From assembly GCA_001179505.1 (NCBI GenBank), contig CDMY01000359.1, positions 1-64,000 on the forward strand: a stretch of 64,000 bases of DNA, given 5' to 3'. A program made the position numbers and the translations under genes. Positions 5,653-57,725 of the stretch are shown one piece after another (the first letter of the stretch is position 1; every line of letters begins with the position of its first letter). The notes below the pieces were generated by a model that made no database searches, was not told the DNA's origin, and was given only the letters and a program-made list of their open reading frames with translations. This DNA is from Vitrella brassicaformis CCMP3155. Its lineage: Eukaryota > Protista > Chromerida.

Positions 5653-5728
5653 GTGGCGTTTCCAGCCGTACACCTCACTACCGTTCCCAGCCAGTCACCT
5701 CACACTGTACGGACCACCCCGAGTAAGC

Positions 5729-28543: not shown

Positions 28544-29689
28544 ATCAACAGCAGCTTCGAGGAGCACGCGAGGGGCACAATTAAGGATGCTGGTACGCAC
28601 CCACAAGACAGCTATTGTTCGTTTCCATCTCCACTTGCTGTCTGCATGTGTTCATCTATCTATCTCCGCAGTGATTTTGAGGACGGTGACAGCCCCTTTC
28701 CTTCGTCGTACGTGCAGAAGTGCCACCTCCACGACATCGCGACAATGGAATACCTTGAAGAGCACCAGCGGTATGCGGAGGCCAAGTACGCCTCCGAAAT
28801 GCGGCCATTACGCCATCGAATCGACAAGGCCTTCGAGGACCACAAGAGGGGTGCAATCGACGACTGTCAGCTGGCGGAGAGGCTTCACGAGCTTTCCATG
28901 AGGGAGAAGGCAGTAATGAAGGAGTATGAAGCCGCCCAACGGGAGATGAATCTGCTGTACGAGAAAGCGTCGAGGTGGGCCACACTGCACTGCAGAGTGC
29001 CATTCCATAAAAAGTGTGTGAATGAATGCCGGATGAGTTGAGAGAGATACTTACGGGATTCGGCGCCGACCCCCGTATCGATGAGCTTTGCGTACGTAAG
29101 GGGCACAGACCGATTGCCTTTGCAGCATACAAAGCGTTCCTTGCTGTGTGTCTTGTGCGTGTGCACATGCCATTGTGCTGAGTAGGAGCGAGAAGGCCAA
29201 GCTGGAGCGGCGGGCCGGCCCATCACCGCACGACATCAACTTGGTTAGTGCCCTAAGTGGCGAGGAGGTGCTGCTTAAGATCATCGACCCATCCCTGCAG
29301 CCGCCGACGCAGGCAAGTAGATAGAGTGGCTGGTACACAGAGGGAAGGGCTGGCTGGGTGGATGTGTGATGTCTGTGTGTGTGTGGTGGCGCCTGCAGAT
29401 GGTGGACATGTTTGGCCTTCCAGCGACGGGATTTGATATCATGATGGAGCACCCCGTCATCCCCGCCATGATCGACATCATAGTCCATGACGGCCTCAAG
29501 GGCGTTCTCATGGAGGGCGGAGGAGGTAGATAGATACGAATACACAGAGGCAGGTAGGCAGGTAGGTCATCTATCTTCTGTCCTTCAGTACCGTTGGTTG
29601 AGTACATTGAGACTGTCGCCACAACAATGGCGCAGGCGAATGCGGAGGGTGCGAGTGAGGAGATGGTGAGGGGGATAGGACGCGGCTGA
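28544..29689 (+). CDS. Coiled-coil module gene, unknown function
   Basis: Exons INSSFEEHARG / DFEDGDSPFPSSYVQKCHLHDIATMEYLEEHQRYAEAKY...EMNLLYEKAS / EKAKLERRAG...QPPTQ / MVDMFG...DIIVHDGLKGVLMEGGG / VPLVEYIETVA. Homologous to the minus-strand 51050-51540 segment. Confidence 0.55.
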
Positions 29690-29889: not shown

Positions 29890-31260
29890 ATGTCACTGCC
29901 TGAGGAGCGCCGGACGGACAGCCGCACATTGGCCAACGAGGCGCGTGTTGACAAGGGGGCCCAGACAGCCGAAGGGAATGACGACAGCTGGCTGACAGAA
30001 GCACCACACCGCCAGCACATAGCCCCGGTCGATGAGGCTCACTTTCTTGCCACCGGTCAGTCAGTCAGTCAGTCGATCGACATAATGAATTGATGCAGGT
30101 GGTCAGAGGAACAATGTGAAGTCTGTCTCGCGGGCGAGTGCCACATGTCGAGGGCGACAGAGATACGGGTCGACGGATGGGGGGACGAGTCGGACGTTTC
30201 CGCCTGGGACTTCTTTTCAGGTATGACAGATCAGCCAACGAGACTAAACACGCCAAGTGAGACCATTGTTTTTCTTCGCTCATTCACTGCCTGCAGTGAA
30301 CACACCACAGGCCCCATACCTGCCCGACAACCACCAAGTCGTACAGGGTATCGCTCGGGCGGCGGCTGGGGGCGGACAGGGCACTGAGGAGGGCACTGAA
30401 GTGCCATCTATGGCAGCCAGGGAGATAGCAGGTAGGCACGAGGTCAGACAGACAAATCATGGCCGATAACCCTCACACGAGCCGTTCCCTCGTCTCCTTT
30501 CCTTCCCCGCCCCGCAGCGTTGCGCGAAAGTATCGCATGGCTTGAAGGACAGTTGAAGGAGAGTGGCGAGGAGTTGTTCAGGCTTCAGACGCTCATCAGC
30601 CAGCAGCAGGTAGGTATTCATTCGACTGCCAAAGTACGTCATAGATCCCTTTGGTTCCCGGTGCTTGCAGTCGTTGATGGCCAGGTCAGAGGAGCAGCTG
30701 AGTGAGCTCCGCCACCGTGTGCAATCGGAGACACACGAAGGAGAAGACGCCGTAAGGAGATGAGACAGAGATGGACATGAGAGACATGGCTTGCACTTCC
30801 ACTCATTTGCCAAACACCAGGCCCTGCCTGAGGACGGCAGCCTGCAGAGTGGGCGAGTGGCATATGTCCGACGGGTCGACGGATGGGGGGACGAGTCAGA
30901 CGTTTCCGCCTGGGACTTCCTTATAGGTATGACAGATCAGCTCACGAGACGCAAGACGAGACACGCCAAGTGAGACCTTCTGTTCTTCTATGGCTGCAGT
31001 CAACACACCAGAGGCCCCTCACCCGCCCGACATCCAGCACGACGGTACGGTTGCAGGTGAGTTCGGCAGACTAACTGACTCATCCATAGCACTCACTTGT
31101 CCTCTGCTTAACGATCTGCAGCTTGATGAGCCGAAAGCCGCCCCACCGCCCGCCAAACGATTGAAGAGGTTTGCCTTTGGTGGCCTGAGGGACAGCATGA
31201 AGTGGGGCGACAAACGAGCGTTTGGCGACCCCCCGAAGCTGCAATCAAGTACATAGCTAT
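29890..31260 (+). CDS. Charged/coiled-coil exon set (GGQGTEE..QTNHGR; ALRESIAWLEGQLKES; GWGDESDVSAWDF), possibly fragmentary
   Basis: Homologous to minus-strand 50020-50700. The GWGDESD segment is duplicated internally (about 30145-30240 and 30860-30940). Confidence 0.4.
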
Positions 31261-32979: not shown

Positions 32980-34147
32980 TCATTCATTTTCGATGTCATC
33001 GTCAAACCACTGCTCGAGGCCGAGCCCGTCAAAGTCCACGCCCATCGAGTCAGTCAGCCGCTGGGCTGCAGCCCAGCACTGTGGGTGCCGACCATAGCCG
33101 CCCTGCGCACGGGACACAGGCGTCTCGAACGAAAAGAGGTCCAGCAGAATGGGAGGAGCGGGGTCGATCAGGACGGCCATGCTCCCCTCCAGCACGTGCA
33201 GGACTGCCGCGTAGGTGTCCTCCGCCTTGTCGCCCGCCAGCACGATGTAGCGCTCTTGGTAGACCATCGGGGGATGCAAGTCGCCCTCCATGCGCGTGCA
33301 TTCGACGACGGTCTTGTTCTCGACCGGCTCGTTCAGCAGCTTCCGGCCGCCGTCCTCGTTGACCTGCCCCTGGGCCAGCCCACCTGCTGCGCTGGTGCTG
33401 GCCGTGATCCGTTGGGTGATGTAGCCGCTGAATGAGGGGTAGACGTGATAGAAGTCACCGCTATACTCGTTAGGTGTGACTGATGTGCGGATCACGGGGT
33501 CCTTAGCGTTGAACTGGAAGCCGGCTCGTAAGCGATTGATGTTGAGGTCCTCGGGCGGGCAGCACGGCGATGGCCTTGTCGCCGATGCGGTACTGGCGCC
33601 TTCGCAGCCGAGTCAGCCCGAGAGTGCCGTCCTGGTCAGTGCCCAGCTGCCCTCCGAATGCAGCGAATTGCTCGATGGCGTGTGGCATGTTGGACATGGC
33701 TCTCTTGTAGGGGAAGGCCAGGTGGAGGGATGAGGGGCACATGAGGACAGGCAGGCTGTTGCTGCCGCTGATCATGCGCTTGTTGCGGGCGATGTAGATG
33801 CCCTTGGTCCATCTCTTCCAGCCCTTGGTGACGTCCAACAGGTACGCCGACCGCACCAGATAGTCGAAGTAGCTGAGGCCGTCGGGCAGAGGAATGCTGC
33901 TTGGCTGACGCGACACGTCGAGCAGTCCGGTCATGCCCTCGGCCGCCAGAGATGCGTCGATGCGCCCGAGGATGAGTGCGGGTGTCACTCCGCTGTGGCC
34001 ATCGGCTTTGTTGGTGCGTCGCAGCGCCACGCAGCTGGCCAGATCAGAGCAGAGGAGGATGAGTGAGAAGATGATGTCATCGATGAGGCTGAAGAAGAAG
34101 CACATCCCATCGGGGGGAGGAACGGACGCTTTGTCAGCTGGCGGCAT
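32980..34147 (-). pseudogene. Lineage-expanded family member A with degenerate F-box-like N-terminus; frameshifted
   Basis: ORFs 33503-34147 and 32980-33495 join (AVLPEDLNINRLRAGF) if the 4-bp duplication GGGC GGGC at 33553-33560 is removed. Could also be an assembly error. Confidence 0.6.
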
Positions 34148-35235
34148 TGCGCCAGGGGGGAAACTCCTGTTCCCTTCCTGGGATGAGAGAGCGGGTTGAT
34201 TGTTCCTGTTCCTGTTCGGGAGATGAGCTCGCGTTGAGAAACCGTTACTGAGAAACCGTTAGCATCGCACTCTGTGTGTGTACGTGTCCGCGTCGCCGTG
34301 TGTGTTTTCCTGCAGGGGACGGCCCGACATCGTTGCCTTCGCCCGACATGTTTGCCTGCGCCACACGGAGGAGGAGATCTTTGGCGTCGAGCTGGGCGGG
34401 CATCATCTGGAGTGGCTGGTGGTGGTGGAGATGACCGACAAGAAGATCGCGGCGGCGCCGGTGCTGCCCTACATGTGAGGAGGCGAAGCATGGCGACGGA
34501 CGGACAGTCAGACAGACAGACAGATGGATGGATGGATGGATGGGAACGAGATACGTGTTTGCGTTTGCGTGTGTGTGTGTGTCGCCAGGTCAAGCCGTGA
34601 CATCGTGGCGCACAAGGACGGCCTGCTGTTCGCCGTCAAGCAGGGCAACACCCAACGATTTAGTCGCCCTTCTTCTGCTCATTGAGCGGACCTTTCCGGC
34701 AGAGAAGCAAAAGGTTGACGTGGGCGGCACGAGCCACGGCTGCGGCAGCTGTGGCACGGCGACAAGTTCGCTGCCGAAGCGACTGCCTGGGTACCAAGGG
34801 CGGATCGTGTATCCTGCTCTGCCTCTGGCTTCAACGAGGCTTCGTGTGTGCTTTTGTTGCATGCAGGTTGTGGGTGAGCGAAGTGGGTGCCTTCCTGCTA
34901 TTCTCTTTTCTGAGGGCATGCGCATGATGCAACAACGGACAGGCTGAGACTTCACGTTTGTGTCGATCCGTCTATGTGAGAGCTTTATCAGTACCCGCCC
35001 TAGTGACGTGCACACTCTATCCATAAAAGACAGACAGCGTTCAAAACGGGCAATCGAAACATCTATCTGCAGGCGGCCACACGGATGTTGTCTGTACATC
35101 GTCATACCCACATACGCCGGCCTCATCTGAGCACTATGACGACACACGTGCATCTACCCAGCAACGCTATGCAGCCCGGCAGGCAGAGTGGATGAGTCCT
35201 GCTCTTAGAAACGACTCCAACGACTACAGAGAGGT

Positions 35236-41029: not shown

Positions 41030-42334
41030 ATGGCGTTCCGGGCTCCCACTCGCCAGCGCCCGAACCCCCGGCCAGTGCCCTCCCTCTGGAGCATCGCACT
41101 CAACAAAGCCGCCACCATGGCCATGGCCGGCGAGGGCAGCAGCAGACGTGAGGCCCTCCTCGCGCAGCTCAGCAGACAGCCCATGACGGAGATCCCAGCT
41201 GGCGTGACTCTGCCGGTGGCCCTCGAGCAGCATAAGGAGCAGATCATGACTCGGGAGGGCCTCCATGGCGTGCTGTCGTTCGCCACAGGCAATGACCTGG
41301 AGGCGGCCATCAAGACGGTGTACGTGCTGGAGAAGGGCGGGGCGTGGCGGGAGTGGGTGGGGCCTCTCCATCTCGCCAAGCACCACGGGTGGGTGGATGC
41401 CCTGCCCATCCAGCTGGCGGCCGACGACCTGCAGCACATCGGAAGCAAGGCCACATTCGCCAGGCGGCCTGAGAGGGTGCGCCAGTACACCCTGTTTAGC
41501 CATCGATTGCGCAAGGGGGGCGAGGATCTGAGTTTCGAGGAGATGGAGGAGATGGGCACGTGGGGGTACCATGAGGGGCGGTCGGATGGCTGCTACTTCC
41601 CGTATGTCGCCAAGGACCCGCCGTGTGACGATAGCGACAGTGAGCCAAACACGATGAACCACAGATAGTTTCAGACATTCATAGCCCCCATGTTGTCCAT
41701 TTGCTTTGTGTGTGCAGACTTGTCTGGTGACAATGGGACATTTGCTACCTTTAGAGGTGCCGTCCTCTTCAGGTACAGACACACATACGCAACAGGGAGA
41801 ACAGAGGAGGTCATTCATCAATCGCATTTTCCTCCGTTGCCTGTTTCCAGCATCCAGTGCGGTGAGACGCTGCGGGGCGTTGAGAGACTCGCAAGCGACG
41901 ACATCTCCAAGGACCGCCAGCCGCGCCGCTACGCTCGCGCCGCGGCCATCCTGAATGACCGATCATCCACTCGCCTGACCACCAAATGGAGCGAGGAAGA
42001 CCCCGAGACGGGCAGCCCCACCTTCGGCAGCCGCATCACTCTGTATGGCGACAAGGCGGGCGACGAGTACGCCCTCTACTTGGCCATCGAGCTCAAGGAG
42101 GAGTTCCCCGAGTTCGTGATGGATGACGACGACGACGACGACGACGGCCCTGCGGAGAAGGCCGTGGTGGAGCTGCTGACCACGGCCAGGGGCAGCCAGC
42201 AGGAGGCTGCCGTGGCCAAGGCGAGGGAGCTGCTGGGCGAGGACGACGTGCGGCTGCTGTTTGGTAGCATCTCGTACCAGGCACTGGTGGCACAGAGGGC
42301 AGCGGACAATGAGCCGCTGCCGCCGCTCGTCTGA
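41030..42334 (+). CDS. Lineage-expanded family member D (multi-exon)
   Basis: TVYVLEKGGAWREWVGPL, GTFATFRGAVLF, SRITLYGDKAGDEYALYL (compare RYIVLAGDKAEDTYAAVL in member A). Confidence 0.68.
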
Positions 42335-44228: not shown

Positions 44229-45030
44229 ATGTCTGATCGGTCGATTGCGAAACGTGCGGGTGAGATCGGAGAGGCTTACCCCGCACTGGATCGGCACCTT
44301 ACAGGCCACGTGAATCTGCTTGCAAGGTACACATACTCACACACACTAAGCTCTCACTCATTGGATGGTTGTCTGTCTGTCTGTCTGTCTGCTGTCTCTT
44401 CTGATGGCTCGTCTCGCCAGACGTCAGTCTGCCCTTGCAGCTCCGGGTAACAAGGCCATGCAGACATTCACCTGACAATTGTGACTGTCTGTCTGTCTGT
44501 CTGTGTCTTGCTTCCTGCTTGTCTGCATGTACTTGTTGGCCGTCTTGGCGTCGCCTATCCGTTCATCGATCCATTCTTCGACGATGCAGTAAGGAAACCT
44601 CAAGAACCAAAGACAGATGACACACCTACTTGTGCTGTGTCATCTACGTCTTCTTTGTGCACACAAACGCAGGCCCGCCGTCCGTCGAAGGGACGAGATC
44701 GCATGGTCACTGAGCACACACTGCTCCCTCATGTGTGAATGTGTGTTGTGGTTCTCGTCTGACTCAGGCGCTGGAGAAGTGGCTCAAGGAACGCGGCCTG
44801 GAGAAACTGACAAACGCACTCCTTAGCAACAACGTTCGCTCTCTCGCGGTATTTACACGATTCTCTCTCACCCCCTCTCACCCTCTCTCTCTCTGCGTGT
44901 GTGTGTGTGATGTGTGCAGCGGTTGAAGAGGGTTACTCACTACGACAATATCGATGAGCTGCGCAACCTGACTGGCCTGACCTGTAGGCTTGATGGATAC
45001 ATGTACGTGCAGACAGACAGAGAGACATAC
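44229..45030 (+). CDS. SAM-like domain gene, tandem copy 1
   Basis: Exons from 44768: ALEKWLKERGLEKLTNALLSNNVRSLA / RLKRVTHYDNIDELRNLTG fit the SAM pattern WLxxxGLxx(Y)xxxLxxxxVxxxxxL. The upstream short exons are tentative. Confidence 0.5.
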
Positions 45031-45559
45031 ACATCTATGTGTGTGCATGGGTGCAGTGGTGGAGAAGGCAACGCTGGTTGGGCTGCACCACGCCATCCCC
45101 ACATGATACACACACTCATGACACACGAACACCGCATGAATGGAGCAGGGAAAGTGAGTGTGCTGGATGTCTGGATGAGGAAAGTGAGTGGATGCTCTCA
45201 CACAGAGATAGACAGAGAGAGAGGGGGACACAGAAGCGATGAGTGGACTGAGTGGTGAGAGAGGGTGCATGGCTGATCAAATGACTGACTGGATGCATGG
45301 ATGCTCACTGGCCGTGTCTCTTTTGTTTTGGAATGGCCACGTGCGTCTGGATGTACCGATGATGCACGCACGCTGCACCAGACCCTACACGCACGCTGCA
45401 CAGAACGCACGTGGGGAGGCCTTGTGATCGATTGAAGATCCGGAGGGGAACTTTCATTGACGATTTCTTTGACCGAAGACATGTTGGGGCCGGCCAAAGC
45501 TGGCAAGATGGGGACGAGATGCCCAGCCGTTCGTCGCTGATCGATTGTTGTGAATCACA

Positions 45560-46380
45560 ATGTCTCGTCGATTAATCGCGATGGCTCGTGGTCAGCTCCC
45601 GGAGTTTCTCGAGAGGAATATCGACGCACTGGATCGGCCCGCGCGGTACACACACGCACACACACTAAGCTCTCACTCAGTGGCTGGTTGTCTGTCTGTC
45701 TGTCTGTCTCGTGTCGCTGTCTCTTCTGATGGCTCGTCTCGGCAGACAGTCTGCCCCTGCAGTTCCGGGTAACAAGGCCATGCAGACATTCACCTGGCAC
45801 TTGCGACTGTCTGTCTGTGCCTTGCCTGCTTGATCGCATAATATGCATATGTGCTGCTCGTCTTGGCGTCGCCCATCCATGGATCCATCCATTCCATTCT
45901 TCGATCCATCGACGATGCAGTAAGGAGACGTCAAGAACCAAACACAGATGACACACCTACTTGTGCTGTGTCATCTGCGTCTTCTTTGTGCACACAAACG
46001 CAGGCCCGCCGACCGTCGAAGGGACGAGATCGCCTGGTCACTGAGCACACACTGCTCACTCACGTGTGAATGTGTGTTGTGTTTCTTGTCTGATTCAGGC
46101 GCTGGAGAAGTGGCTCAAGGGACGCGGCCTGGAGCACCTCGCCCACTCCCTCAAGGCCCGCGGCGTGGCGTCACTGGCCGTGGGCAAACTATCATACCAT
46201 CATAATAATCTTACATTACCTCTCTCTCTCTCTCTGTGTGTGTGTGCGTGAGATATGTGCAGGAGCTCAAGGAGGTGACTCGCAACCCTGATAAGCTGCG
46301 AAGCCTAACCCGCGGCGATCGCGATACCCGCCTGAGCCGTAGGCTTGATGGATACATGAACGTGCAGACAGAGAGACATA
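45560..46380 (+). CDS. SAM-like domain gene, tandem copy 2
   Basis: Direct paralogue of 44229-45030, introns included. From 46099: ALEKWLKGRGLEHLAHSLKARGVASLA / ELKEVTRNPDKLRSL. Confidence 0.5.
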
Positions 46381-47399
46381 CACAGATGTGTGTGCATGGG
46401 TGCAGTGGAGGAGATAGCAACGCTGGCTGGGCTGCATTGCGCCATCCCCGAATGATAGACACAGACTGAAGTGAAGGAGGGCCGGAGTGAGACTGTGTGG
46501 ACTGACTGGCTGACTGGATTGTTTCAGTGTGTCTGAGGTGCATGTGGATGGACGAATACCCTGACACACTGATGGTGGACTCGTCTCCACCGCTGCGACA
46601 CTGATGGTGACTCCAGCTGTTGCATGATGAACTCACTCGAATACGGTCGTGTTGGCTGGCTGGCACATGGGACAAGACAGATACTAAGTGTGGCACTAAG
46701 ACGCACACAGTCTTGGCTGTGTTGCAGTGTGCGTCTGTGCGGTGTTCCTTCATATGTGGCTGTTTGCATGGGCGACCGAGTCTCATGTCCTCAACCAACG
46801 ACTGCAAACCACACACAGAAAGGACAGCATTGATTGGATGCAGTCACACACTTTTGCAATTCTGTTCTCTGCCTTTGTCCGTTGTCTCACGAGGCCTGCT
46901 GTGAGATTTCTGTCCCGAGTCGAACATACTCCTCGATGAACGTCAAGACATGATTGATGCCAAGTACTCGTGTCTCTGTCGCACCCACCCCAAAGTCGAT
47001 GAGCCTATACGGTTTGCACCAAGAAACAACACAATAATACAAAATGCAGACAGCAATCTGCTGAACTACACACATTCCGCCTTCGATCAACATGTCTCTC
47101 CCTCTCCCGAGCCGATGTCGCCATTATATAAGCGGTACTTGTGGCTTGATCCTCCCCGTCTCTTCTGGCTTCCTTCCTTTGCTCTCAACTTCCTTTTTTC
47201 TGGCGGGGCTGAAGGTGGCCAGCCGCTGGCCCACGAAGGCCGGCCGACAAATCATCCATGAGGCTGGTCAAATTATCTTCTTCACTCGTCTCTGCTTGTC
47301 ACTGGCGGTCGTGAGACGAAGTGTAGTGTGGGCTTGGGGGTGGGGTGGGGTTGGGTGTGGCGAGAAAAGACGTGGCCAAGGGTTGGAAGGGCTGGTGGT

Positions 47400-48150
47400 G
47401 AGGGAGAGGGTAGAGGAAATTGGGGCTGAGAGCTTAAAGCTGGACCGTTATGGCTCGTCGTTCGCTTTCCCTGAGCACACACATGACACAGTTGTGAAGA
47501 GAATGGCCCTGTAGATCTCGTCATCGAACACACCGGAGCTCCTTTTAGGGCTTGAAGCTGGGAGGCGGCCCAAATGTTCCGTCCAGGGGGCGGCGCGCAA
47601 CACCCACAAGGAACGGCTTCGGGGCAGGTGGCCGTCCTCCTGGAAGGAGTGTCTTCCTTGAGGGGATGAGCTTCTTGGCTGAGAGAGACACAGAAGCAGA
47701 CAGTGAAGTATGATGACAGACACACGGCTTGTCTTCCGTTGTATCGTCTCAGCGCACCTCTTGTTTGCTCCGGCACCGACGGCAGCTTGCGCTTGGGCTT
47801 GGGCTTGGGCTTGGGTGTTGTCGCCCTCTCTCGCAGTCGCTCCTGGAACGTCTTTGACTTGTTTTTGAACTGAGAAGCCAACCAGGCCACCATTAGAAAG
47901 TTGAGAGCTTCCAATCGAATGGCGCATTGTGGTGCAGCCGACCTGCTGCCTGAGCCGCTGGCGCCGTTGGTTTGTTTCCGCAATATCCCTCCACGCCCGC
48001 TGGAAGGGCGTCTCCTCGCTGGCCCCCTCCTCTCCCTCGTCTGCCGTGTCCTGCGCCGCCGTCTCCTCGACAACCTCCTCCTCGCCCTCGGCTGCTGTGT
48101 CGTCAGAAGGCAGGCACTCAGTAGGTTGTCTAGTTGGTTCTTGAGTATTC
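47400..48150 (-). CDS. Family X copy 4
   Basis: SDDTAAEGEEEVVEETAAQDTADEGEEGASEETPFQRAWRD...; FKNKSKTFQERLRE...LPSVPEQTR. The third exon is diverged or frameshifted. Confidence 0.5.
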
Positions 48151-48289
48151 ACTTCTTTTTTGACTGCCGGCTGACGAGGACAGTCGGAAAAAGATAATAT
48201 GCTGGCGGCAGAAAGCTGCAGTACCTTCTGCTTGGAGAATGCAAGTGTTCGGGGCCGTCCTTCTGTCCGCAGGTTTCTCGGCTCGACAG

Positions 48290-48620
48290 CGTCAGAGGGC
48301 CCTCGTCTGCCGTCTCCTCGGCAACCCCCTCCTCTTCCTCGTCTGCCGTCTCCTGCACGGCCATCTCCTCGGCAAGCTCGGCAGCCGTGTCCTCCGCCGC
48401 CGTCTCCCCGACCACCCCCTCCTGTCCCTCGGCTGCCGCCTCGACGATCTCCTCCTCTCCCTCGGCTGCGGTGTCGTCAGAGGGCTGCTTGGGCATGATC
48501 TCTTCGTCCACGTCGAATGCGTCGCGCAAGTTGAGGGCCGCCGAGTCGCTCATCAAGCTCCCTGTTTTTCTCGGTGAGCGCCGCCCTTTGAGACGCAACC
48601 AAAGTTGCATGCATTGATCT
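48290..48620 (-). pseudogene. Family X acidic exon only (copy 5)
   Basis: SDSAALNLRDAFDVDEEIMPKQPSDDTAAEGEEE... without the following X exons. Confidence 0.45.
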
Positions 48621-48722
48621 GAAATGGAAAGGGCCTGTTGGTCCGAAGACACGACGGCACACGGAAAGCACCCAGACAGAGAGGTGTGGCGTGGCGGGCT
48701 AATGGATCATTGTAGGTGTCCC

Positions 48723-49968
48723 CTACCGCGAGTGATCGAATGCTAGTGCATTGCAGAGATGCTCCAGGCCGCGTGTCTTGAGGAAGTTGCTCAGTGCCTG
48801 AATCAGACAGGACACGCCTGTGTGTGTAGTGTGTGAGCAGTGTCTCTGTGTGTATTTCTGTGCAGGTGAGAGACACTGCGTACCAGTCGAGCCTGCTGTG
48901 CCGGTGCCGCATGCTTTTGGGCAGAAGGGACACACACAAAGGAGGGATCACACAGAGCCAAAGTGGGACTGTGTGGCGGTTGGTGTCTCCTTGCTGCACC
49001 ATGGATGGATGGATGGATGGACAGATGACGCGAACGACCAGCACACCCAAAGAAGCAAGGCACAGACAGACAGACATGCACACTTGGCCAAGTGAGGGTC
49101 TGCATTCCTTTCTTACCTTGTGTGTGTGTGTGTGTGTGTGTCTTGTCTTACCACCAGCGGGACGGATCGCGCAATCTTCATTTGGGAAGAGACGCCCAGA
49201 TATAAAATGTAGGCGGCGATGCTGATCGGAGGTCTTCGGCCTGGTTGAATGTCGATTACAAGCAGCACCCATCCCAGGGACGTCAGCCCCCTGCCACCAC
49301 ACAGCGCCCTTCCCTTCGCCCACCGCTTCACCAGCAAGGCTGAGAAAGAGAGCAAGCCGTGAATTGTCACACTGTCTTTTGTGAACGTTAGTGACCGGTG
49401 TCTCCGCTTACCCAGCTTCCTGATAATTGGAGAAGACTCCATATATGCGAGGAGGAGCTTGGCCTTGTGGCTCCCCAGGCCGTTGTTAAAGGCCACATCA
49501 GCCTTCCCCCTTCCTTGGCTCTGACCAGACACACACCAGACACAAACCATCATCTGAACATCTTCTGTTCCATGATTCTGTCATTTTGGTACCTTTGACA
49601 GATGGCAGTGCACTGTCGGCCAACGCGCCCCATTTCGGGCATGGATGGACATGTCGGCCCCATACTGTTGACATGCACGCAGCGCACATGTCTCTTTGTT
49701 CTTTCTTTCCTTTTTTCGTTCGTCCTTGGCCTTCACTCACCCGATGCTTCAGGTCATCCCCCAGCTTCTCGCAGGCCAGCATCCCGACATCCTGATGCCC
49801 CTGCCTGGCCGAGCCCTCTCTAAGCAGCTGGTCGGCCTTGTCGGCCGGGATGGCAGCCGACAAGTCGACGTCGCTCTCCCATAAAGCCAGCTTGTAAGCA
49901 GCTGAGCCGAAGAGAACGGCGTCGGTGCCAAAGACCCGGTGCACGGCCTTTCGGAGCCGCCGCGCCAT
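48723..49968 (-). CDS. Cid1/TUTase-like (non-canonical poly(A)/poly(U) polymerase family) nucleotidyltransferase followed by a truncated SAM-like exon
   Basis: Four in-phase GT-AG exons (49968-49741, 49664-49593, 49520-49412, 49339-) give MARRLRKAVHRVFGTDAVLFGSAAYKLALWESDVDL...GARWPTVHCHL...ADVAFNNGLGSHKAKLLLAYM...LALLVKRWAKGRALCGGRGLTSLGWVLL. This parallels S. pombe Cid1 as I recall it (FGSLESGLALKNSDMDL; DIGFNN; LLVKHWAK; LSSYGYVLM). SAM-like exon ALSNFLKTRGLEHLCNAL at 48797-48723; its linkage is inferred. Confidence 0.8.
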
Positions 49969-50019
49969 GGGCTCTGGTGGGTTGTTGATCGTGGAACGAG
50001 GCAGAGGACAATAAGTGCT

Positions 50020-51540
50020 ATGGATGACTAAGTAGTCTGCCGAATTCACCTGCAAGCGTACGTCTTGGTGGTTGTCGGGCGGGTGTCGGGCCTGTGGTGT
50101 GTTCACTGCAGGCAGTGGTCTCACTTGGCGTGTCTCGTGTGCTGATCTGTCACACCTTCAAGAAAGTCGTAGGCGGAAATGTCCGACTCGTCCCCCCATC
50201 CGTCGACCCGTCGGACATATGCCACTCGCCCACTCTGCAGGCTGCCGTCCTCAGGCAGGGTCTGGTGTTTGGCAAATGAGTGGAAGTGCAACCCATGTCT
50301 CTCATGTCCATCTCTGTCTCATCTCCTTACGGCGTCTTCTCCTTCGTGTGTCTCCGATTGCACACGGTGGCGATGCTCACTCAGCTGCTCCTCTGACCTG
50401 GCCATCAACGACTGCAAGCACCGGGAGCCAAACAAAGGGATGTATGACGTACTTTGGCAGTCGAAATGAATACCTACCTGCTGCTGGCTGATGAGTGTCT
50501 GAAGCCTGAGCACCTCCTCCTCGCTCTCCTTTAACCGTCCTTCTAACCATGCGATACTTTGGCGCAGCGCTGCGGGGCGGGGAAGGGAAGGAGACGAGGG
50601 GACGGCTCGTGTGAGGGTTATCGGCCATGATTTGTCTGTCTGGCCTCTTGCCTACCTGCTATCTCCCTGCTCTCCTCAATGCTCTCCTCAGTGCCCTGTC
50701 CGCCCCCAGCCGCAGCCGCCCGACCGATCTCGCGCAGCTTGCTGATGGTGTCCTCAACCGACGCACTCAGCTCCAGGCTATGGCCACCAGCAGACGCGCC
50801 CGCCAGTCCGCTCAGCCGTGCGTCCCTCTCCGGCAGCGGCCTCGATGGCGGCACTGGTGAGAGGATGGGCCGGTTGTCGTACCAGTGCTGCCGTGGGGAG
50901 GGCAGCTGCGAGTCGGTCATGGGCGTTGTCTGGCTCGGAGGGGTCAACTCAGAATGAAAATCAGAATCCTGACCGACCAACACGGACACAGGAGATGTCT
51001 GTCTGTCTGTCTGTCAACACACCCATTCGCGCACCTCCCCACCGTCGTCAGATCGGTGATCCAGGCCGCTACGCCAGTCGGCGGCCCCTCACCCGCCCCT
51101 GCCAGCAGCCCGTGGAGGCCGTCGTCCACCACATCCCGCTGGTATGAAACAGAAGATGCTTCCAACGCCGGTTGCTCTTGCTCCTTCCACTCTCGTCTCA
51201 CCTCGAGCTGTTTGAGGTCATGTTTGATCTTTCGACGCTCTCTGTCCATCTCTTGTTGGGCTTCCTCGTACTCGTTCATGGCTGCCCTCTCCCTCATGGA
51301 AAGCTGGTGCACCTTCTCTGCCAGCTCAGCATCGTCGATCGCCCCCCTCTTGTGGTCCTCGAAGGCCTTTTCTATTCGATGGCGTAAGGGGCGCATCTCG
51401 GCGGCGTACTTGGCCTCGCTGTACCGCTGGTGCTCTTCAAGGTATTCCATGGTCGCGATGGCGTGAAGGTGGCACTTCTGAACGTTTGACGACGGAAAGG
51501 CATCGTCATCGTCGTCCTCAAAATGACTGCGGAGAGAGAG
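50020..51540 (-). CDS. Coiled-coil and charged exon set upstream of the nucleotidyltransferase; inverted paralogue of 28544-31110
   Basis: HFEDDDDDAFPSSNVQKCHLHAIATMEYLEEHQRYSEAKY...; GGQGTEE..QTNHGR; SIAWLEGRLKESEEEVLRLQTLISQQQ; GWGDESDISAYDF. Confidence 0.5.
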
Positions 51541-51648: not shown

Positions 51649-51799
51649 CATCGCCGTCCTCGGCTCTGTCGTAGTCGTTGAGCGACACCGACAAGTGGAC
51701 GTCGCTCTCGCACAAAGCCAGCTTGTATGCAGCTGAGCCAAACAGCGGGGCGTTGGTCTCAAGGAGCTGGTGCACGGCTTTTCAAAGCCGCCGCGTCAT
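51649..51799 (-). pseudogene. Dead nucleotidyltransferase exon-1 fragment, copy 1
   Basis: MTRRL*KAVHQLLETNAPLFGSAAYKLALCESDVHL: CGA>TGA nonsense at 51782-51784 and catalytic DxD>DxH. Confidence 0.75.
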
Positions 51800-52549
51800 G
51801 GCGACCAACGGATACAGAGCAGGCGAATGTCAACACAGCCGGCAGATATAAAAAGTAGGCAGCGATCCTGTTGGGAGAGGTGCGGAGGGAGGAGGAAGCA
51901 TGGTGGGCGACTCTGATCATTAGACATGCAGAAAACGTTTGTGAAGAGATTTGTATCTGCAGATGTTGTAATCGGACGTACTTGATCATGCGATACTTTG
52001 GCGCAGCGCTGCGGGGCGGGGAAGGGAAGGAGACGAGGGGACGGCTCGTGTGAGGGTTATCGGCCATGATTTGTCTGTCTGGCCTCTTGCCTACCTGCTA
52101 TCTCCCTGCTCTCCTCAATGCTCTCCTCAGTGCCCTGTCCGCCCCCAGCCGCAGCCGCCCGACCGATCTCGCGCAGCTTGCTGATGGTGTCCTCAACCGA
52201 CGCACTCAGCTCCAGGCTATGGCCACCAGCAGACGCGCCCGCCAGTCCGNNNNNNNNNNNNNNNNNNNNNNNNNNNNNNNNNNNNNNNNNNNNNNNNNNN
52301 NNNNNNNNNNNNNNNNNNNNNNNNNNNNNNNNNNNNNNNNNNNNNNNNNNNNNNNNNNNNNNNNNNNNNNNNNNNNNNNNNNNNNNNNNNNNNNNNNNNN
52401 NNNNNNNNNNNNNNNNNNNNNNNNNNNNNNNNNNNNNNNNNNNNNNNNNNNNNNNNNNNNNNNNNNNNNNNNNNNNNNNNNNNNNNNNNNNNNNNNNNNN
52501 NNNNNNNNNNNNNNNNNNNNNNNNNNNNNNNNNNNNNNNNNNNNNNNNN

Positions 52550-52700
52550 CATCGCCGTCCTCGGCTCTGTCGTAGTCGTTGAGCGACACCGACAAGTGGA
52601 CGTCGCTCTCGCACAAAGCCAGCTTGTATGCAGCTGAGCCAAACAGCGGGGCGTTGGTCTCAAGGAGCTGGTGCACGGCTTTTCAAAGCCGCCGCGTCAT
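52550..52700 (-). pseudogene. Dead nucleotidyltransferase exon-1 fragment, copy 2
   Basis: Identical by eye to 51649-51799. Lies next to gap 52250-52549, so it may be an assembly duplicate. Confidence 0.6.
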
Positions 52701-52879
52701 GGCGACCAACGGATACAGAGCAGGCGAATGTCAACACAGCCGGCAGATATAAAAAGTAGGCAGCGATCCTGTTGGGAGAGGTGCGGAGGGAGGAGGAAGC
52801 ATGGTGGGCGACTCTGATCATTAGACATGCAGAAAACGTTTGTGAAGAGATTTGTATCTGCAGATGTTGTAATCGGACG

Positions 52880-53699: not shown

Positions 53700-54850
53700 T
53701 ATTTGTATCTGCAGATGTTGTAATCGGACGTACTGGATCTCTTCTTGGGAGGATTTGGGCGTGGGCCAAACGTCCTGTCAATGGGGCGGCGGGGGATGCC
53801 GACGAGGAAGGGTGGGCGCCATCCTGGGAGCGGGGTCTTACCGTCCAGCATCTTCTGCTTTGACGGTATCTGCTTCTTCGCTGAGAGACACACATAAGCA
53901 GACAGTGAATGTGTGATGGCCAGAGACACCGCAGCGGTCTGCACCCATTCTCTCGGCATACCTCCGAAATCTTGCTTCCTCCCCGAATTTGTGCACATAT
54001 TCTGCGCCTACATAAGCCGCCGCACATTCTTGTGATTTTGTTGATCGTCTCGCCTCCCCGGCCGAGTATCAGCCCCCTCTCGGTCTGATGCAGGAATGAA
54101 AGCGCCACACACACATGCGTGGACGTATATCTCAGCCATGAGTGTGTATTTGCTCATCACTGGCGAGTTCATCTCGAATTTCTCGCGGATGAGCTTGCCG
54201 GGCCTTGGCGGGTTTGCCGGCAGATGGCCGATGACTTCATCGATGCTCTGGCCCGCCGCCAGGGACTTGAGGGTGCGATCGAACTCGTGCATCATCCGGG
54301 CGCGCATCTGAACAGGAGCATCAGAGGCAGAGACATGTGTGTGTGCATGCATCTGCGGCTCCATGCAATCGTCTGTATACCTGCGGCTTCACCGTGTACA
54401 TGCTGTCGGTCTCTATCGGGTCCTCGACCCACATGTCCTGAAGAGGCAGGGGAACTTCTCGCGTCAAAGCAAGCCTTTTGTCCATTCATTTTGTTGCTGG
54501 GTACCTCGGGGTGGTCAGCATAGTCCGTCTCCCTATCGTCGGCCCTCTGTGATGTCTGCAGGCGCACATGCCACATGCCGTGATGTGGTATCCCCTCTCT
54601 CCTTCTCATGTTACTTACGGTGGCGCTGTCTGTGTTGATGTATTTTCTCTGTCGTCGGTGTCGCTGCAGGTATTCTGCTTTGGTGACGACGTCGGGGGCC
54701 AGGCGGATGGCGACGACGTATTTGCGGACATCGAGCTGCTCCTTGTAGAAACTAAACAAGATAGAATCAAAGGAGAGAAGGTACACAAGCAGGGTTTTTG
54801 GCTGTGTCTCCATCCCTCCCTCCCTGTCTATCTCCCTGTGTGTGCGTATA
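53700..54850 (-). CDS. KH-like domain exons followed by a Y-family terminal exon
   Basis: Exon 54307-54125 (...GKLIREKFEMNSPVMSKYTLMAEIY), a ~40-nt intron, then TERGLILGRGGETINKITRMCG...AQIRG: GxxG loop and helix pattern of type-I KH domains. The next intron and exon are Y-type. Confidence 0.5.
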
Positions 54851-55009
54851 TATGAGGCCTACTCACCTGAAAAACTCATACAAGAGCTGGGGCAGCTCGA
54901 GATTCGCGCCGTTGGCGGCGTAGGGGTTTACCCGTCGCCTGTCACACACACACATAAAAGAGCTCGATAAGTATCTCAGGGAATCTCCTGTCTGCGGCTC
55001 AATTCACCT

Positions 55010-55950
55010 GAAGTTCCTTCTTCTCTCCAGCTCCTGTCTCGCCTCCTTGGGTGGAGGGAATTGGGGCTGCCGCTCATCATTCGCTCTCCCTGATCACACA
55101 CATGACACAATTGTGACGAGAATGGCCCTGCAGATCTCGTCATCGGACACACTGGAGCTCTTTTCGTAGGGGCTTGAAGGTGGGAGGCGGGCCAAATGTT
55201 CCGTCCAGGGGGCGGCGGGCGACACCCACTAGGAACGGCTTCGGGGCAGGTGGCCTCGCTCCCGGCAGCAGCGTCCCGTCCAGCATCGCCTTCCTTGCGG
55301 GCACGGGCTTCTCGGCTGAGAGAGACGCAGAGACAGGCACACGGCTTGTCTTTCGAGGTATCCTCTCAGCGCACCTCTTGTCTGCTCCGGCACCGACGGC
55401 AGCTTGGGCTTGGGCTTGCTGTAGCCGCTGCCGGCGACCTTCCTTAGGTGTCGGTGCTCACTCTCCCGCAGCCGCTCCTGGAACGTCTTTGACTTGTTTT
55501 TGAACTGAGAAGCCAACCAGGATACCATTCGAAAGTTGAGAGCTTCCAATCGAATGGCGCATTGTGGGTGCAGCTGACCTGCTGCCTGAGCCGCTCGCGC
55601 CGTTGGTTTGTTGCAGCGATCTCCCTCAAGGCCCGCTGGAATGGCGTCTCCTGGCAGTCGGCCCCCTCCTCTCCCTCGTCTGCCGCCTCCTCGGCAACGA
55701 GCTCGACAGCCGACGCCATCTCCTCGGCAACGTCGACAGCCGTGTCCTCCGCCGCCGTCTCCCCGACCACCCCTCCTGTCCCTCGGCTGCCGTCTCCTTG
55801 ACGGTCTCCTCCTCTTCCTCGGCAGCTGTGTCGTCAGAGGGCTGAGCCCCTTAAGCTTCTTTCAGGGTCTCTTCGTCGAGGTCGAACTCGTCGCGCAGGT
55901 CGAGGGCCTCCGAGTCGCTCGTTTCAATCTCGTGGGTCCTGGGGCTTCCA
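55010..55950 (-). pseudogene. Family X copy 6, in-frame TAA within the acidic exon
   Basis: SDSEALDLRDEFDLDEETLKEA*GAQPSDDTAAEEE... (stop at 55851-55853), then FKNKSKTFQERLRES... and AEKPVPARKAMLDGTLLPG. Could be functional if it starts downstream of the stop. Confidence 0.5.
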
Positions 55951-57024: not shown

Positions 57025-57549
57025 TTACGTAAAGTAGTGGTTTATCTCCGCTCTGACCAGCTGCTGTGCTCGCGCAGAAGGGGCCTGCATTCCCCACAAG
57101 GACACGCAGCATTTGCGGTCCATGGTATGTCCTGCCGCCTCTCTTTCAATCCGCACCTGCTGTTTGAACCGAGAGCGCTGCCCCACTGGCGGCAGGGGGT
57201 CTCGCCCACTGTCACTTGACCTTCTTGACTCGTTTTCATGTCCACCGCTCGAAGGCAGACGGTCGCTTTGTCGCCTTGCTTCCCATCTCCGATAGTAGGC
57301 CTCATCATACACTTGGCCGTAAGAGGGCCGTCTGGCGTTGTGGAAGAACCACACGCTGTCGTGCTCTCCTTGATAGTCGACCCCTGGCAAGCGCAGGAGG
57401 GGCAGGGGGCCTCTCTCGTGGTCTCGATGGTAGAAGACTTCATATACTCTGTCGGGCGCGAGTGGCGTGGGGGAGTGGCTGAAGTACCACGACGCGTCAT
57501 ACTCGCCAGCGAAATCGATGTCACGCACACTGTGCTGACGGGGGGGCAT
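57025..57549 (-). CDS. Hypothetical protein with two tandem ~35-aa aromatic-rich repeats
   Basis: RDIDFAGEYDASWYFSHSPTPLAPDRVYEVFYHR and PGVDYQGEHDSVWFFHNARRPSYGQVYDEAYYRR. May continue in downstream exons. Confidence 0.55.
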   Translation of the reverse strand: MPPRQHSVRDIDFAGEYDASWYFSHSPTPLAPDRVYEVFYHRDHERGPLPLLRLPGVDYQGEHDSVWFFHNARRPSYGQVYDEAYYRRWEARRQSDRLPSSGGHENESRRSSDSGRDPLPPVGQRSRFKQQVRIEREAAGHTMDRKCCVSLWGMQAPSARAQQLVRAEINHYFT

Positions 57550-57725
57550 CACCAGGACACCAACGATAAGGCGCAAACGCGAAAGACACGAGATTCTCCA
57601 GCCTGATTTCTGAGATCGAAGACGAAATGTGATCGCGCGGGACGCATCATTCATTGCGAGGGTTTTTCTTAGCAAGCCCCACCTCTTTGTCTGCCTGCTC
57701 TTCAATCGGGGACGCCGGCAGCATC

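What the first reader, a model, noticed from the sequence alone, without database searches (positions are those of the whole stretch)
48723..49968. Apparently intact Cid1/TUTase-like RNA nucleotidyltransferase linked to SAM inside a duplicating RNA-binding-module array
Hand splicing of four canonical exons gives an open catalytic domain with all three acidic residues (SDVDL, DVAFNN) and the LLVKRWAK / LTSLGW central-domain helices. However, I see no PAP-associated / nucleotide-recognition segment (xEDPF-like). SAM-type exons follow instead, coiled-coil exons precede it, and KH-like exons lie nearby. I do not know this architecture. It could be a lineage-specific RNA-tailing system (silencing or surveillance, by analogy to Cid1, Trf4 or RDE-3) or a nucleotide-signal synthase evolving by birth-and-death.
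Basis: partly seen in the sequence, partly recalled or inferred. Interest (0 to 1): 0.78.

Follow-up and report, generated by a model that had tools for sequence, protein, structure and literature searches.

The report
Truncated Cid1-type RNA-tailing enzyme copy
This stretch of the alga Vitrella brassicaformis holds the front half of a Cid1-type RNA-tailing enzyme gene, already in the public annotation. It keeps the catalytic residues but has lost the nucleotide-recognition half. It carries no real SAM domain and is most likely a decaying duplicate.

Summary
On the minus strand, four GT-AG exons (49975-49152) give an open Cid1-type catalytic domain with FGS, SDVDL, DVAFNN, LLVKRWAK and LTSLGW.

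It is already annotated: exons 7-10 of Vitrella brassicaformis CCMP3155 protein CEM05504.1 (572 aa). Its best solved relatives are Cid1 (E 5e-6), URT1 and TUT4.

The interpretation does not hold.
- Similarity to Cid1 and to the gene's own paralogues stops just after LTSLGWVLLVI, at about Cid1 residue 220 of 405. Most of the central domain and the nucleotide-recognition motif are missing.
- The "SAM" part is one 24-codon exon ending in a stop. It scores 12.4 bits against a cut-off of 27, and it lies in an inverted partial copy of a neighbouring plus-strand unit.
- In the one RNA run, spliced contigs join that exon to other exons, not to the NTase. A further RNA junction puts a stop in the annotated ORF before the NTase.

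Fuller paralogues exist elsewhere. Contig C461 has an apparently full-length copy. C494 has a copy (CEM17692.1) that lost the DxD but keeps a PAP-associated-like segment and a KH-like tail.

Verdict: a truncated, chimeric product of segmental duplication, weakly transcribed and probably not an active transferase. Earlier notes of this scan (s1-201860, s1-212034, s1-231160) flagged the same gene family on this genome.

The parts
49741..49975 (-). NTase exon (P0002 exon 7). Holds ATG 49968, the helix MARRLRKAVHRVF, the G-S motif FGSAAY and the DxD motif SDVDL.
   Evidence: Frame and borders; exon map of P0002; NTP_transf_2 at 22.7 bits; aligned to Cid1 residues 36-70.
49593..49664 (-). NTase exon 8 (YGADMSIHARNGARWPTVHCHLSK), the beta-strand before the third Asp. 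ARWPT replaces the paralogues' ARVP(I/V).
   Evidence: Its 3' intron, 49521-49592, is confirmed by a spliced X5 contig.
49412..49520 (-). NTase exon 9, with the third catalytic Asp (KADVAFNN, matching Cid1 D160 and N164/N165). HKA replaces Cid1 H170-N171-T172.
49152..49339 (-). NTase exon 10. Its first ~28 codons are the first helices of the central domain (LLVKRWAKGRALCGGRGLTSLGWVLLVI). DNA homology to the C494 paralogue ends at 49255. The last ~34 codons have no significant relative.
   Evidence: The PDB alignments stop at this point.
48723..48797 (-). SAM-like 24-codon exon (ALSNFLKTRGLEHLCNALAFDHSR) plus a TAG stop; the annotated last exon of P0002. In RNA run X5 it is an internal exon joined to 48884 and to 48634.
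   Evidence: SAM_EPH reaches only 12.4 bits against 27.
48724..49117 (-). Inverted partial copy of the plus-strand tandem units 44446-44851 and 45768-46140. This copy supplies the SAM-like exon.
   Evidence: the repeat finder pairs I1 and I2; colinear blastn matches at 69-80% identity; genome DNA search.
50050..51450 (-). Upstream coiled-coil part of the annotated gene, P0002 exons 1-6. Exon 6 (50090-50050) is not supported by RNA: X5 splices out 50050-50155, which gives ...DFLEGEFGRLLSHP followed by a stop.
51677..51799 (-). Degenerate copy of the DxD exon (SDVHL, with an in-frame TGA). It recurs at 52578-52700, on the other side of an assembly gap.
54378..54940 (-). PAP-associated-like exons of another, 5'-truncated paralogue (...ELPQLLYEFFR; FYKEQLDVRKYVVAIRLAP; VEDPIETD). 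They lie upstream of the catalytic exons, not downstream.
   Evidence: tblastn with C461 exons; 90.7% DNA identity to C494:12456-13524; PAP_assoc at E 0.1.
54019..54081 (-). KH-like GxxG segment (ILGRGGETINKI) belonging to that upstream fragment.
   Evidence: KH_1 E 0.0011, 19.1 bits against a cut-off of 21.5.

Best explanation
The locus is a truncated, chimeric paralogue of a Vitrella-specific Cid1-type terminal nucleotidyltransferase gene, made by segmental duplication and rearrangement.

**What it keeps.** The Pol-beta palm: G-S, DxD, the third Asp, and the first two helices of the central domain with the triphosphate-binding lysines of VKRWAK.

**What it lost.** After ...LTSLGWVLLVI the gene breaks off. 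About 155 residues of the central domain are missing, including the nucleotide-recognition motif. The PAP-associated-like and KH-like segments that its nearest paralogue (CEM17692.1) still carries are also missing.

**What took their place.** Unrelated sequence, then an inverted scrap of a neighbouring unit. That scrap supplies a 24-codon SAM-like tail and a stop. Upstream, the annotation joins a coiled-coil gene fragment to the NTase.

**Expression.** The region is transcribed at low level and spliced. The RNA junctions seen do not support one continuous coiled-coil-NTase-SAM reading frame.

**Inference.** The product, if made at all, cannot position the base of the incoming NTP or the RNA 3' end as Cid1 does, so it is most likely an inactive relic.

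**Shown:** the exon structure, the family relationship, the truncation point, the origin of the tail and the RNA junctions.
**Inferred:** loss of activity.
For: **Family.** Cid1 E 5.2e-6, URT1 1.1e-5, TUT4 1.7e-4. PF22600 scores 26.8 bits.

**Truncation.**
- PDB alignments stop at Cid1 residue ~220 of 405. In Cid1 the central domain spans residues 166-377 and the NRM 327-339 (PMC13702519).
- blastn homology to C494 ends at 49255.
- P0003 residues 144-465 have no counterpart downstream.
- No PF03828 hit on this contig.

**Tail.** It is an inverted copy of 44446-44851 / 46081-46140 and reaches only 12.4 bits against 27 for SAM.

**RNA.** The junction 50156|50049 gives a stop 10 codons later. The SAM-like exon is joined to 48884 and 48634, and in the NTase frame a stop follows after 27 codons.

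**Sibling copies are fragments too.**
- C494 lost the DVD motif and has a TAG.
- The copies at 51.7 and 52.6 kb read SDVHL and carry a TGA.
- The C494 minus-strand copy has a TAG.

**Weak constraint.** Exon identity to C494 is 92.1% against 89.0% for introns. A conserved ARVP strand residue has become Trp.

**Not an assembly artefact.** Independent DNA contigs span 48389-49448 colinearly with the window.
Against: - The four catalytic exons are fully open and keep every catalytic residue.
- dN/dS against the C494 copy is 0.30 (16 non-synonymous, 17 synonymous changes). Selection therefore acted for part of the time since the duplication.
- With C461 as outgroup, the window copy has fewer derived replacements than the broken C494 copy, 3 against 6.
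- The locus is transcribed and spliced.
- The RNA evidence is one run of assembled contigs at depth 2-5, so other isoforms, including the annotated one, cannot be excluded.
- Palm-only nucleotidyltransferases do exist in bacteria.
Confidence: 0.72

Rival explanations
1. The truncated protein is functional. On this reading it is a coiled-coil-tethered, palm-only Cid1-type enzyme, or an inactive regulatory or decoy subunit. It would be kept by selection and might work with central-domain/KH-bearing paralogue fragments supplied in trans.
For: - The ORF is open and the catalytic triad intact.
- dN/dS is 0.30.
- It has fewer derived changes than the C494 pseudogene.
- It is transcribed.
- Complementary fragments exist: CEM17692.1 lacks the DxD but keeps the C-terminal half, and PAP-like and KH-like exons lie 5 kb upstream.
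Against: - No known Cid1-family enzyme works without the central domain and NRM (PMC13702519).
- N171/T172 and the base-stacking Tyr position are already changed: HKA and LTSLGW against Cid1 LSSYGY.
- An RNA junction breaks the annotated ORF upstream.
- The upstream PAP-like/KH fragment belongs to a different subfamily, 90.7% identical to the C494 minus-strand copy.
- Exons are barely better conserved than introns.
Confidence: 0.15
2. One reading: an intact NTase-SAM fusion that forms a lineage-specific RNA-tailing system or nucleotide-signal synthase.
For: - The annotated model CEM05504.1 does join exon 10 to the SAM-like exon.
- There is weak SAM similarity: SAM_EPH E 0.14 for the tail, and SAM_2 E 0.037 for the plus-strand paralogous exon.
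Against: - The tail is 24 codons followed by a stop and covers 22 of 60 SAM profile positions.
- No RNA contig joins exon 10 to it. X5 joins it to 48884 and to 48634.
- There is no OAS, cGAS or Mab21 hit; all PDB hits are Cid1-type TENTs.
- The central domain and NRM are missing.
Confidence: 0.04
3. Assembly or annotation artefact. In the organism the gene is complete, and its 3' half was lost because this repeat-rich region, next to an N gap, is collapsed or mis-joined.
For: - An N gap lies at about 52250-52570, flanked by 100% identical duplicates.
- Summed contig depth in the DNA runs is several-fold higher at 50.5-51.6 kb than in the flanks. The tool warns that this depth is not a copy number.
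Against: - Contigs assembled independently from DNA runs of two studies (X1, X3) cover 48389-48994 and 49151-49448. In X3 a single record covers both, with the right spacing. The break after LTSLGWVLLVI and the inverted scrap are therefore in the reads.
- The genome search finds no second copy of exons 9-10 with a better continuation, apart from C494.
Confidence: 0.06

Closest known systems
Cid1 / URT1 / TUT4-7 family of terminal uridylyl- and non-canonical poly(A) polymerases (TENTs; Pfam PF22600 plus PF03828)
   Same: - The Pol-beta palm has G-S, DxD and a third Asp in DVAFNN (Cid1 D160, N164/N165).
- The VKxWAK helix and the L(S/T)S.G. helix are present.
- These are the best PDB hits: Cid1 at 5e-6 and URT1 at 1e-5.
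   Different: - It lacks Cid1-equivalent residues ~221-377, that is most of the central domain, the NRM with H336, and PAP_assoc.
- N171/T172 are K/A, and the Tyr212-equivalent is Leu.
- In the annotation it is fused to an N-terminal coiled-coil segment.
CEM17692.1 / A0A0G4FSK1 (P0003), the Vitrella paralogue on contig C494
   Same: 81-96% identical over exons 7-10, with the same introns. It belongs to the same Vitrella-only subfamily: no other protein reached E 0.001 in 1.84 billion representatives.
   Different: P0003 has lost the DVD motif (7- and 3-nt deletions, and a TAG upstream). It keeps exon D (RTPPLLPNLQ...), a PAP-associated-like segment and a KH-like tail, all of which the window copy lacks.
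Paralogue on contig C461 (about 30.2-34.4 kb), apparently full length
   Same: Same exon order A-A2-B-C. It is 34-49% identical to the window exons, and the catalytic motifs are intact.
   Different: - It continues with RRPPLLPNLQ, ...LLYEFFK, FY..F......ASIRLAP and VEDPIETD-type exons.
- It reaches the Pfam cut-offs: NTP_transf_2 29.6 bits and PF22600 29.2 bits.
- I did not verify its complete spliced ORF.
SAM domain (PF00536, PF07647, PF22993)
   Same: An L..FLK.RGLEHL pattern resembles the first helix or two of a SAM domain.
   Different: Only 24 codons before a stop. It scores 12.4 bits against a cut-off of 27 and covers profile positions 3-24 of 60.

Membership tests
Cid1-type TENT (non-canonical PAP/TUTase) | Pol-beta NTase signature: hG[GS], [DE]h[DE]h and a third carboxylate | tested here: met
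   FGSAAY, SDVDL and KADVAFNN lie in one open spliced frame. NTP_transf_2 reaches 22.7 bits on exon 7 alone, cut-off 21. The motifs align to Cid1 D101/D103/D160.
Cid1-type TENT (non-canonical PAP/TUTase) | Significant sequence similarity to family members rather than to other NTase-fold families | tested here: met
   PDB phmmer gives Cid1 5.2e-6, URT1 1.1e-5, TUT4 1.7e-4, and also Star-PAP, CutA and TUT7. No OAS, cGAS or canonical PAP appears at E<=1. PF22600 scores 26.8 bits, just under its cut-off of 27.
Cid1-type TENT (non-canonical PAP/TUTase) | Complete central domain (Cid1 residues 166-377) | tested here: not met
   Alignments end at Cid1 residue ~220. Only 57 residues follow in P0002. 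Homology to the paralogues ends at 49255, or about 49225 at protein level.
Cid1-type TENT (non-canonical PAP/TUTase) | PAP-associated domain / nucleotide-recognition motif (PF03828; Cid1 residues 327-339) | tested here: not met
   P0002 has no Pfam hit for it. The genome-wide PF03828 search finds nothing on contig C359. The only PAP-like exons in the window lie upstream, in another fragment.
Cid1-type TENT (non-canonical PAP/TUTase) | Nucleotide-contacting residues N171/T172 and the aromatic residue of the LSSYGY helix | tested here: not met
   The alignment shows HKA in place of HNT and LTSLGW in place of LSSYGY. Residue roles are taken from PMC13702519 and, for the Tyr, from my own knowledge of Cid1.
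Cid1-type TENT (non-canonical PAP/TUTase) | Template-independent nucleotide addition to RNA 3' ends | not testable with these tools
   This needs a recombinant protein assay.
SAM domain | Match to a SAM profile at the curated cut-off over most of the ~60-70 residue domain | tested here: not met
   For P0002:515-572, SAM_EPH gives E 0.14 and 12.4 bits against 27, over profile positions 3-24 of 60. The exon-containing ORF alone gives no hit.
SAM domain | Transcript joins the NTase exons to the SAM exon in frame | tested here: inconclusive
   The annotation joins 49152|48797. The X5 contigs show 48884|48797 and 48727|48634 instead, and none reaches exon 10. This rests on one low-depth run of contigs only.
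OAS / cGAS (Mab21) nucleotide-signal synthases | Sequence similarity to OAS, cGAS or Mab21 family members | tested here: not met
   None appear among the PDB hits at E<=1 or the Pfam hits at E<=0.1.

The most novel reading that the evidence does not exclude
The coiled-coil-linked, palm-only Cid1 fragment (CEM05504.1) is a working subunit of a split or minimal RNA-tailing enzyme. The missing central-domain/KH functions would come in trans from sibling fragments such as CEM17692.1. On this reading, complementary decay of the duplicates has produced a two-piece TENT.
Probability: 0.05. Interest if true: 0.6.

Novelty: new member of a known kind. Interest (0 to 1): 0.2.

Why it matters
It matters little by itself. 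It is a truncated duplicate of a known enzyme family, already in the public protein set under an automatic name.

Its value is as an example and as a caution:
- Chromerid genomes contain clusters in which exons of Cid1-type tailing enzymes, KH-like modules and coiled-coil pieces are duplicated, inverted and re-spliced.
- Gene models in such clusters, here CEM05504.1, can stitch fragments into ORFs that the RNA does not clearly support.
- The wider Vitrella-only Cid1-PAP-associated-KH family may deserve study. The intact-looking copy on contig C461 and CEM17692.1 are better starting points than this locus.

Tried and rejected
1. **Exon-by-exon PDB search of the unspliced pieces.** It gave only E 0.5 to URT1. 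The match included a five-residue RRPPI identity. I first took this for real homology, then for read-through of a former intron. Neither view is supported statistically.
2. **Degenerate exon D.** I proposed that window 49254-49098 is a degenerate copy of the paralogue's intron plus exon D. Shuffling tests rejected this: 21 of 300 and 43 of 500 shuffles reach the observed score. A gap-free protein alignment, VLLVIDIQPGRRPPI against VLLVIYYDQMRTPPL, leaves open about 10 more homologous codons without the paralogues' intron.
3. **SAM-like exons as diverged copies of NTase exon C.** This rested on tblastn E 4e-4 to C461. DNA tests were significant only against C461, and there probably through (TG)n low complexity. 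Not supported.
4. **AlphaFold2 on P0002:335-572 without an alignment.** Mean pLDDT was 37, which is unusable, so no fold search was run.
5. **Word search for the downstream acidic ORF (48152-48652).** No annotated protein of 92-292 aa was found.
6. **Word search for exon 7.** It found only the C494 chimera P0001. The look-up of encoding contigs had no record of P0001.
7. **Literature searches.** They found nothing on Vitrella TENTs or on Cid1-KH fusions.
8. I handed no self-made spliced model to any search tool. The spliced protein was searched only as the public entry P0002. Scripts translated exons one at a time, carrying over the split-codon nucleotides. One roughly 130-nt spliced stretch of the C494 paralogue was built inside a script for the alignment test.

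Full report
**Identity of the sequence.** The window is contig C359 of a 72.7-Mb, 1064-contig genome. Protein look-ups name the organism as Vitrella brassicaformis CCMP3155.

**The observation.** The gene lies on the minus strand. Hand-derived exons 49968/49975..49741, 49664..49593, 49520..49412 and 49339..49152 have GT..AG borders and join in one open frame. The encoded peptides, exon by exon, are:
- MARRLRKAVHRVFGTDAVLFGSAAYKLALWESDVDL...KHR
- YGADMSIHARNGARWPTVHCHLSK
- SQGRGKADVAFNNGLGSHKAKLLLAYMESSPIIRKL
- ALLVKRWAKGRALCGGRGLTSLGWVLLVIDIQPGRRPPISIAAYILYLGVSSQMKIARSVPLV

A search of 1.84 billion representative proteins with the exon 9-10 piece returned the public annotation of this very locus: P0002 = CEM05504.1 / UniProt A0A0G4F2B0, 572 aa. 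UniRef names it 'Polymerase nucleotidyl transferase domain-containing protein'. Mapping P0002 back onto the window shows it uses exactly these four exons as its exons 7-10. Six coiled-coil-type exons precede them (51450-50050), and one last exon, 48797-48726, follows and runs into a TAG.

**Family.**
- Exon 7 alone reaches Pfam NTP_transf_2: 22.7 bits, cut-off 21.
- P0002:345-572 gives PF22600 (MTPAP-like central palm) at 26.8 bits, cut-off 27.
- In the PDB its best matches are S. pombe Cid1 (E 5.2e-6), Arabidopsis URT1 (1.1e-5), TUT4 (1.7e-4), Star-PAP, CutA and TUT7. No OAS, cGAS or canonical PAP appears.
- KADVAFNN aligns to Cid1 D160-N165. VKRWAK and LTSLGW align to Cid1 VKHWAK and LSSYGY.

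It descends from a Cid1-type TENT.

**Why it is not intact.**
- All PDB alignments stop at P0002 residue ~515, which is Cid1 residue ~220 of 405.
- In Cid1 the central domain spans residues 166-377 and the nucleotide-recognition motif residues 327-339, with H336 (PMC13702519). About 155 residues of that domain are absent here.
- P0002 has only 57 residues after LLVI. They give no Pfam hit apart from a 12.4-bit, 22-position SAM_EPH match against a cut-off of 27.
- PF03828 (PAP_assoc) is found on four other contigs of this genome but not on this one.
- Cid1 N171/T172 are K/A here, and the aromatic position of LSSYGY is Leu.

**Paralogues.** Genome searches with the exons find three kinds of relatives.

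1. *Contig C494, plus strand, 8886-9592.*
   - It is 87.8% identical in DNA to window 49990-49255, after which homology stops.
   - It is annotated as P0003 = CEM17692.1, 465 aa. Deletions of 7 and 3 nt have removed the DVD motif, and it has a TAG upstream.
   - It continues past LLVI with an intron, an exon RTPPLLPNLQQSCGG...YIKHN, a ...FYEFF segment and a KH-like tail.
   - P0003 residues 144-465 have no counterpart downstream of the window's exon 10.
2. *Contig C461.*
   - It carries an apparently full-length and more distant copy, 34-49% identical. Its motifs are intact (GSDVDM, VDITFEN).
   - It has exons for RRPPLLPNLQ, LLYEFFK, FY..F...IASIRLAP and VEDPIETD.
   - It reaches the Pfam cut-offs: NTP_transf_2 29.6 bits and PF22600 29.2 bits.
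3. *C494, minus strand.*
   - This is a third type, with an in-frame TAG inside its catalytic exon.
   - Its C-terminal half is 90.7% identical to window 53969-55050.

That window segment holds PAP-associated-like exons (54940-54378) and a KH-like GxxG segment (KH_1 E 0.0011). It lies upstream of the catalytic exons and belongs to a 5'-truncated fragment. Degenerate copies of exon 7 (SDVHL, with a TGA) sit at 51.7 and 52.6 kb. No protein outside Vitrella reached E 0.001.

**What replaced the 3' half.** The 34 codons after LLVI have no significant DNA similarity to the paralogue's intron or exon D. A gap-free protein alignment, DIQPGRRPPI against YYDQMRTPPL, leaves open about ten more homologous codons. 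From 49117 to 48724 the sequence is a colinear, inverted partial copy of the plus-strand tandem units at 44446-44851 and 45768-46140. The 'SAM-like' exon is the scrap of those units that happens to be spliced. The plus-strand exons themselves reach only SAM_2 E 0.037 and SAM_EPH E 0.11.

**RNA evidence.**
- *Which runs are RNA.* Of the runs holding this DNA, X1, X3 and X4 behave as genomic DNA: contigs up to 225 kb that contain the introns. X5 holds contigs with GT-AG joints on the minus strand, so it is RNA.
- *What X5 confirms.* It confirms introns 50570-50655 and 49521-49592 of P0002.
- *First disagreement.* X5 joins 50156 to 50049, skipping annotated exon 6. In the coiled-coil frame this reads ...DFLEGEFGRLLSHP followed by a stop, about 50 nt before the NTase ATG.
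- *Second disagreement.* X5 joins the SAM-like exon upstream to 48884, not to exon 10 at 49152. It joins it downstream to 48634, instead of ending at the TAG. In the NTase frame this gives a stop after 27 more codons. Another frame opens a long acidic ORF, MSDSAALNLRDAFDVDEE....
- *Limits.* No X5 contig links exon 10 to the SAM-like exon. Depth is 2-5 and these are assembled contigs from one run, so other isoforms cannot be excluded.
- *Assembly check.* DNA contigs from two studies cover 48389-49448 colinearly with the window. The truncation is therefore in the reads and is not a scaffolding artefact.

**Selection.**
- Against the C494 copy, exons are 92.1% identical and introns 89.0%.
- dN/dS is 0.30, from 16 non-synonymous and 17 synonymous changes. 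The catalytic exons were therefore constrained for part of the time since the duplication.
- With C461 as outgroup, the window lineage has 3 derived replacements and the C494 lineage 6. One of the window's is V440W, in the conserved ARVP strand.

This is the main evidence against a long-dead relic. It keeps a functional reading alive at about 15%.

**Conclusion.** The finding is a real Cid1-type catalytic module that is already annotated. It is a truncated, chimeric duplicate in a cluster of shuffled fragments, not an intact NTase-SAM enzyme. The ideas of a new tailing system or a nucleotide-signal synthase do not. Related Cid1-KH copies were noted earlier by this scan on other pieces of the genome (s1-212034, s1-231160), and the cluster itself in s1-201860. 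I checked those leads only as far as CEM17692.1 and the C494 and C461 loci.

**Limits.**
- Structure prediction without an alignment failed, with pLDDT 37.
- No self-made spliced model was sent to any search tool. The public entry P0002 served in its place.
- The complete spliced ORF of the C461 paralogue was not verified.

Noticed in passing
window 1-5700, minus strand: Long ORFs look like a Ty3/gypsy-type retrotransposon pol: integrase-like ...RVAMDFIGPF..., RT/RNase H-like segments and a gag-like ORF. This was read by eye from the ORF list only.
   Followed up: no
window 52250-52570 and flanks: A run of N (assembly gap) is flanked by 100% identical duplicates: 51649-51948 equals 52550-52849, and 50548-50810 equals 51987-52249. 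This looks like a scaffolding artefact in a collapsed tandem array. Summed contig depth in the DNA runs at 50.5-51.6 kb is several-fold that of the flanks.
   Followed up: partly
window 46550-48172, minus strand: A 1322-nt spliced RNA contig (X5) has four GT-AG introns. Its open frame reads acidic repeats, then ETPFQRAWRDIAETNQRRQRLRQQ, FKNKSKTFQERLRE, ...PPSFKP and a stop, with no Pfam hit. The same module recurs at about 52.9-53.7 and 55.07-56.1 kb. No annotated protein of 92-292 aa matched the ORF just upstream of this contig (48152-48652).
   Followed up: partly
window 44300-46500, plus strand: Tandem duplicate units with a period of about 1331 nt carry a SAM-like exon (ALEKWLKGRGLEHLAHSLKARGVASLA). 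SAM_2 gives E 0.037 and SAM_EPH E 0.11. Run X5 shows no RNA over 46000-46373.
   Followed up: partly
G000:C461:30200-34400 (L016:2200-6400), plus strand: An apparently full-length Cid1-type paralogue has intact catalytic motifs, large insertions and a long Pro/Gln-rich tail. It is the best candidate for a working enzyme of this family. Its spliced ORF was not verified.
   Followed up: partly
G000:C494:12400-14800 (L015:7400-9800), minus strand: A third paralogue type has an in-frame TAG between LFGSYV and the SDIDLV motif. Its PAP-like/KH half is 90.7% identical to window 53969-55050.
   Followed up: partly
G000:C494:7854-8881 (P0001, 257 aa): An annotated chimeric protein has an intact copy of the first 50 residues of the NTase exon (through SDVDLSAAIPADKADQLLREG). 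This piece runs directly into the coiled-coil module.
   Followed up: partly
window 28857-28950, 30362-30611, 32996-34192 and 41030-42261: Further blocks are 74-92% identical to C494:3689-8881. Contigs C359 and C494 therefore share a larger, rearranged segmental duplication.
   Followed up: no
window 57028-57723, minus strand: A 232-aa open frame has a repeated motif (D/E)YDASWYF / HDSVWFF and no Pfam hit.
   Followed up: no
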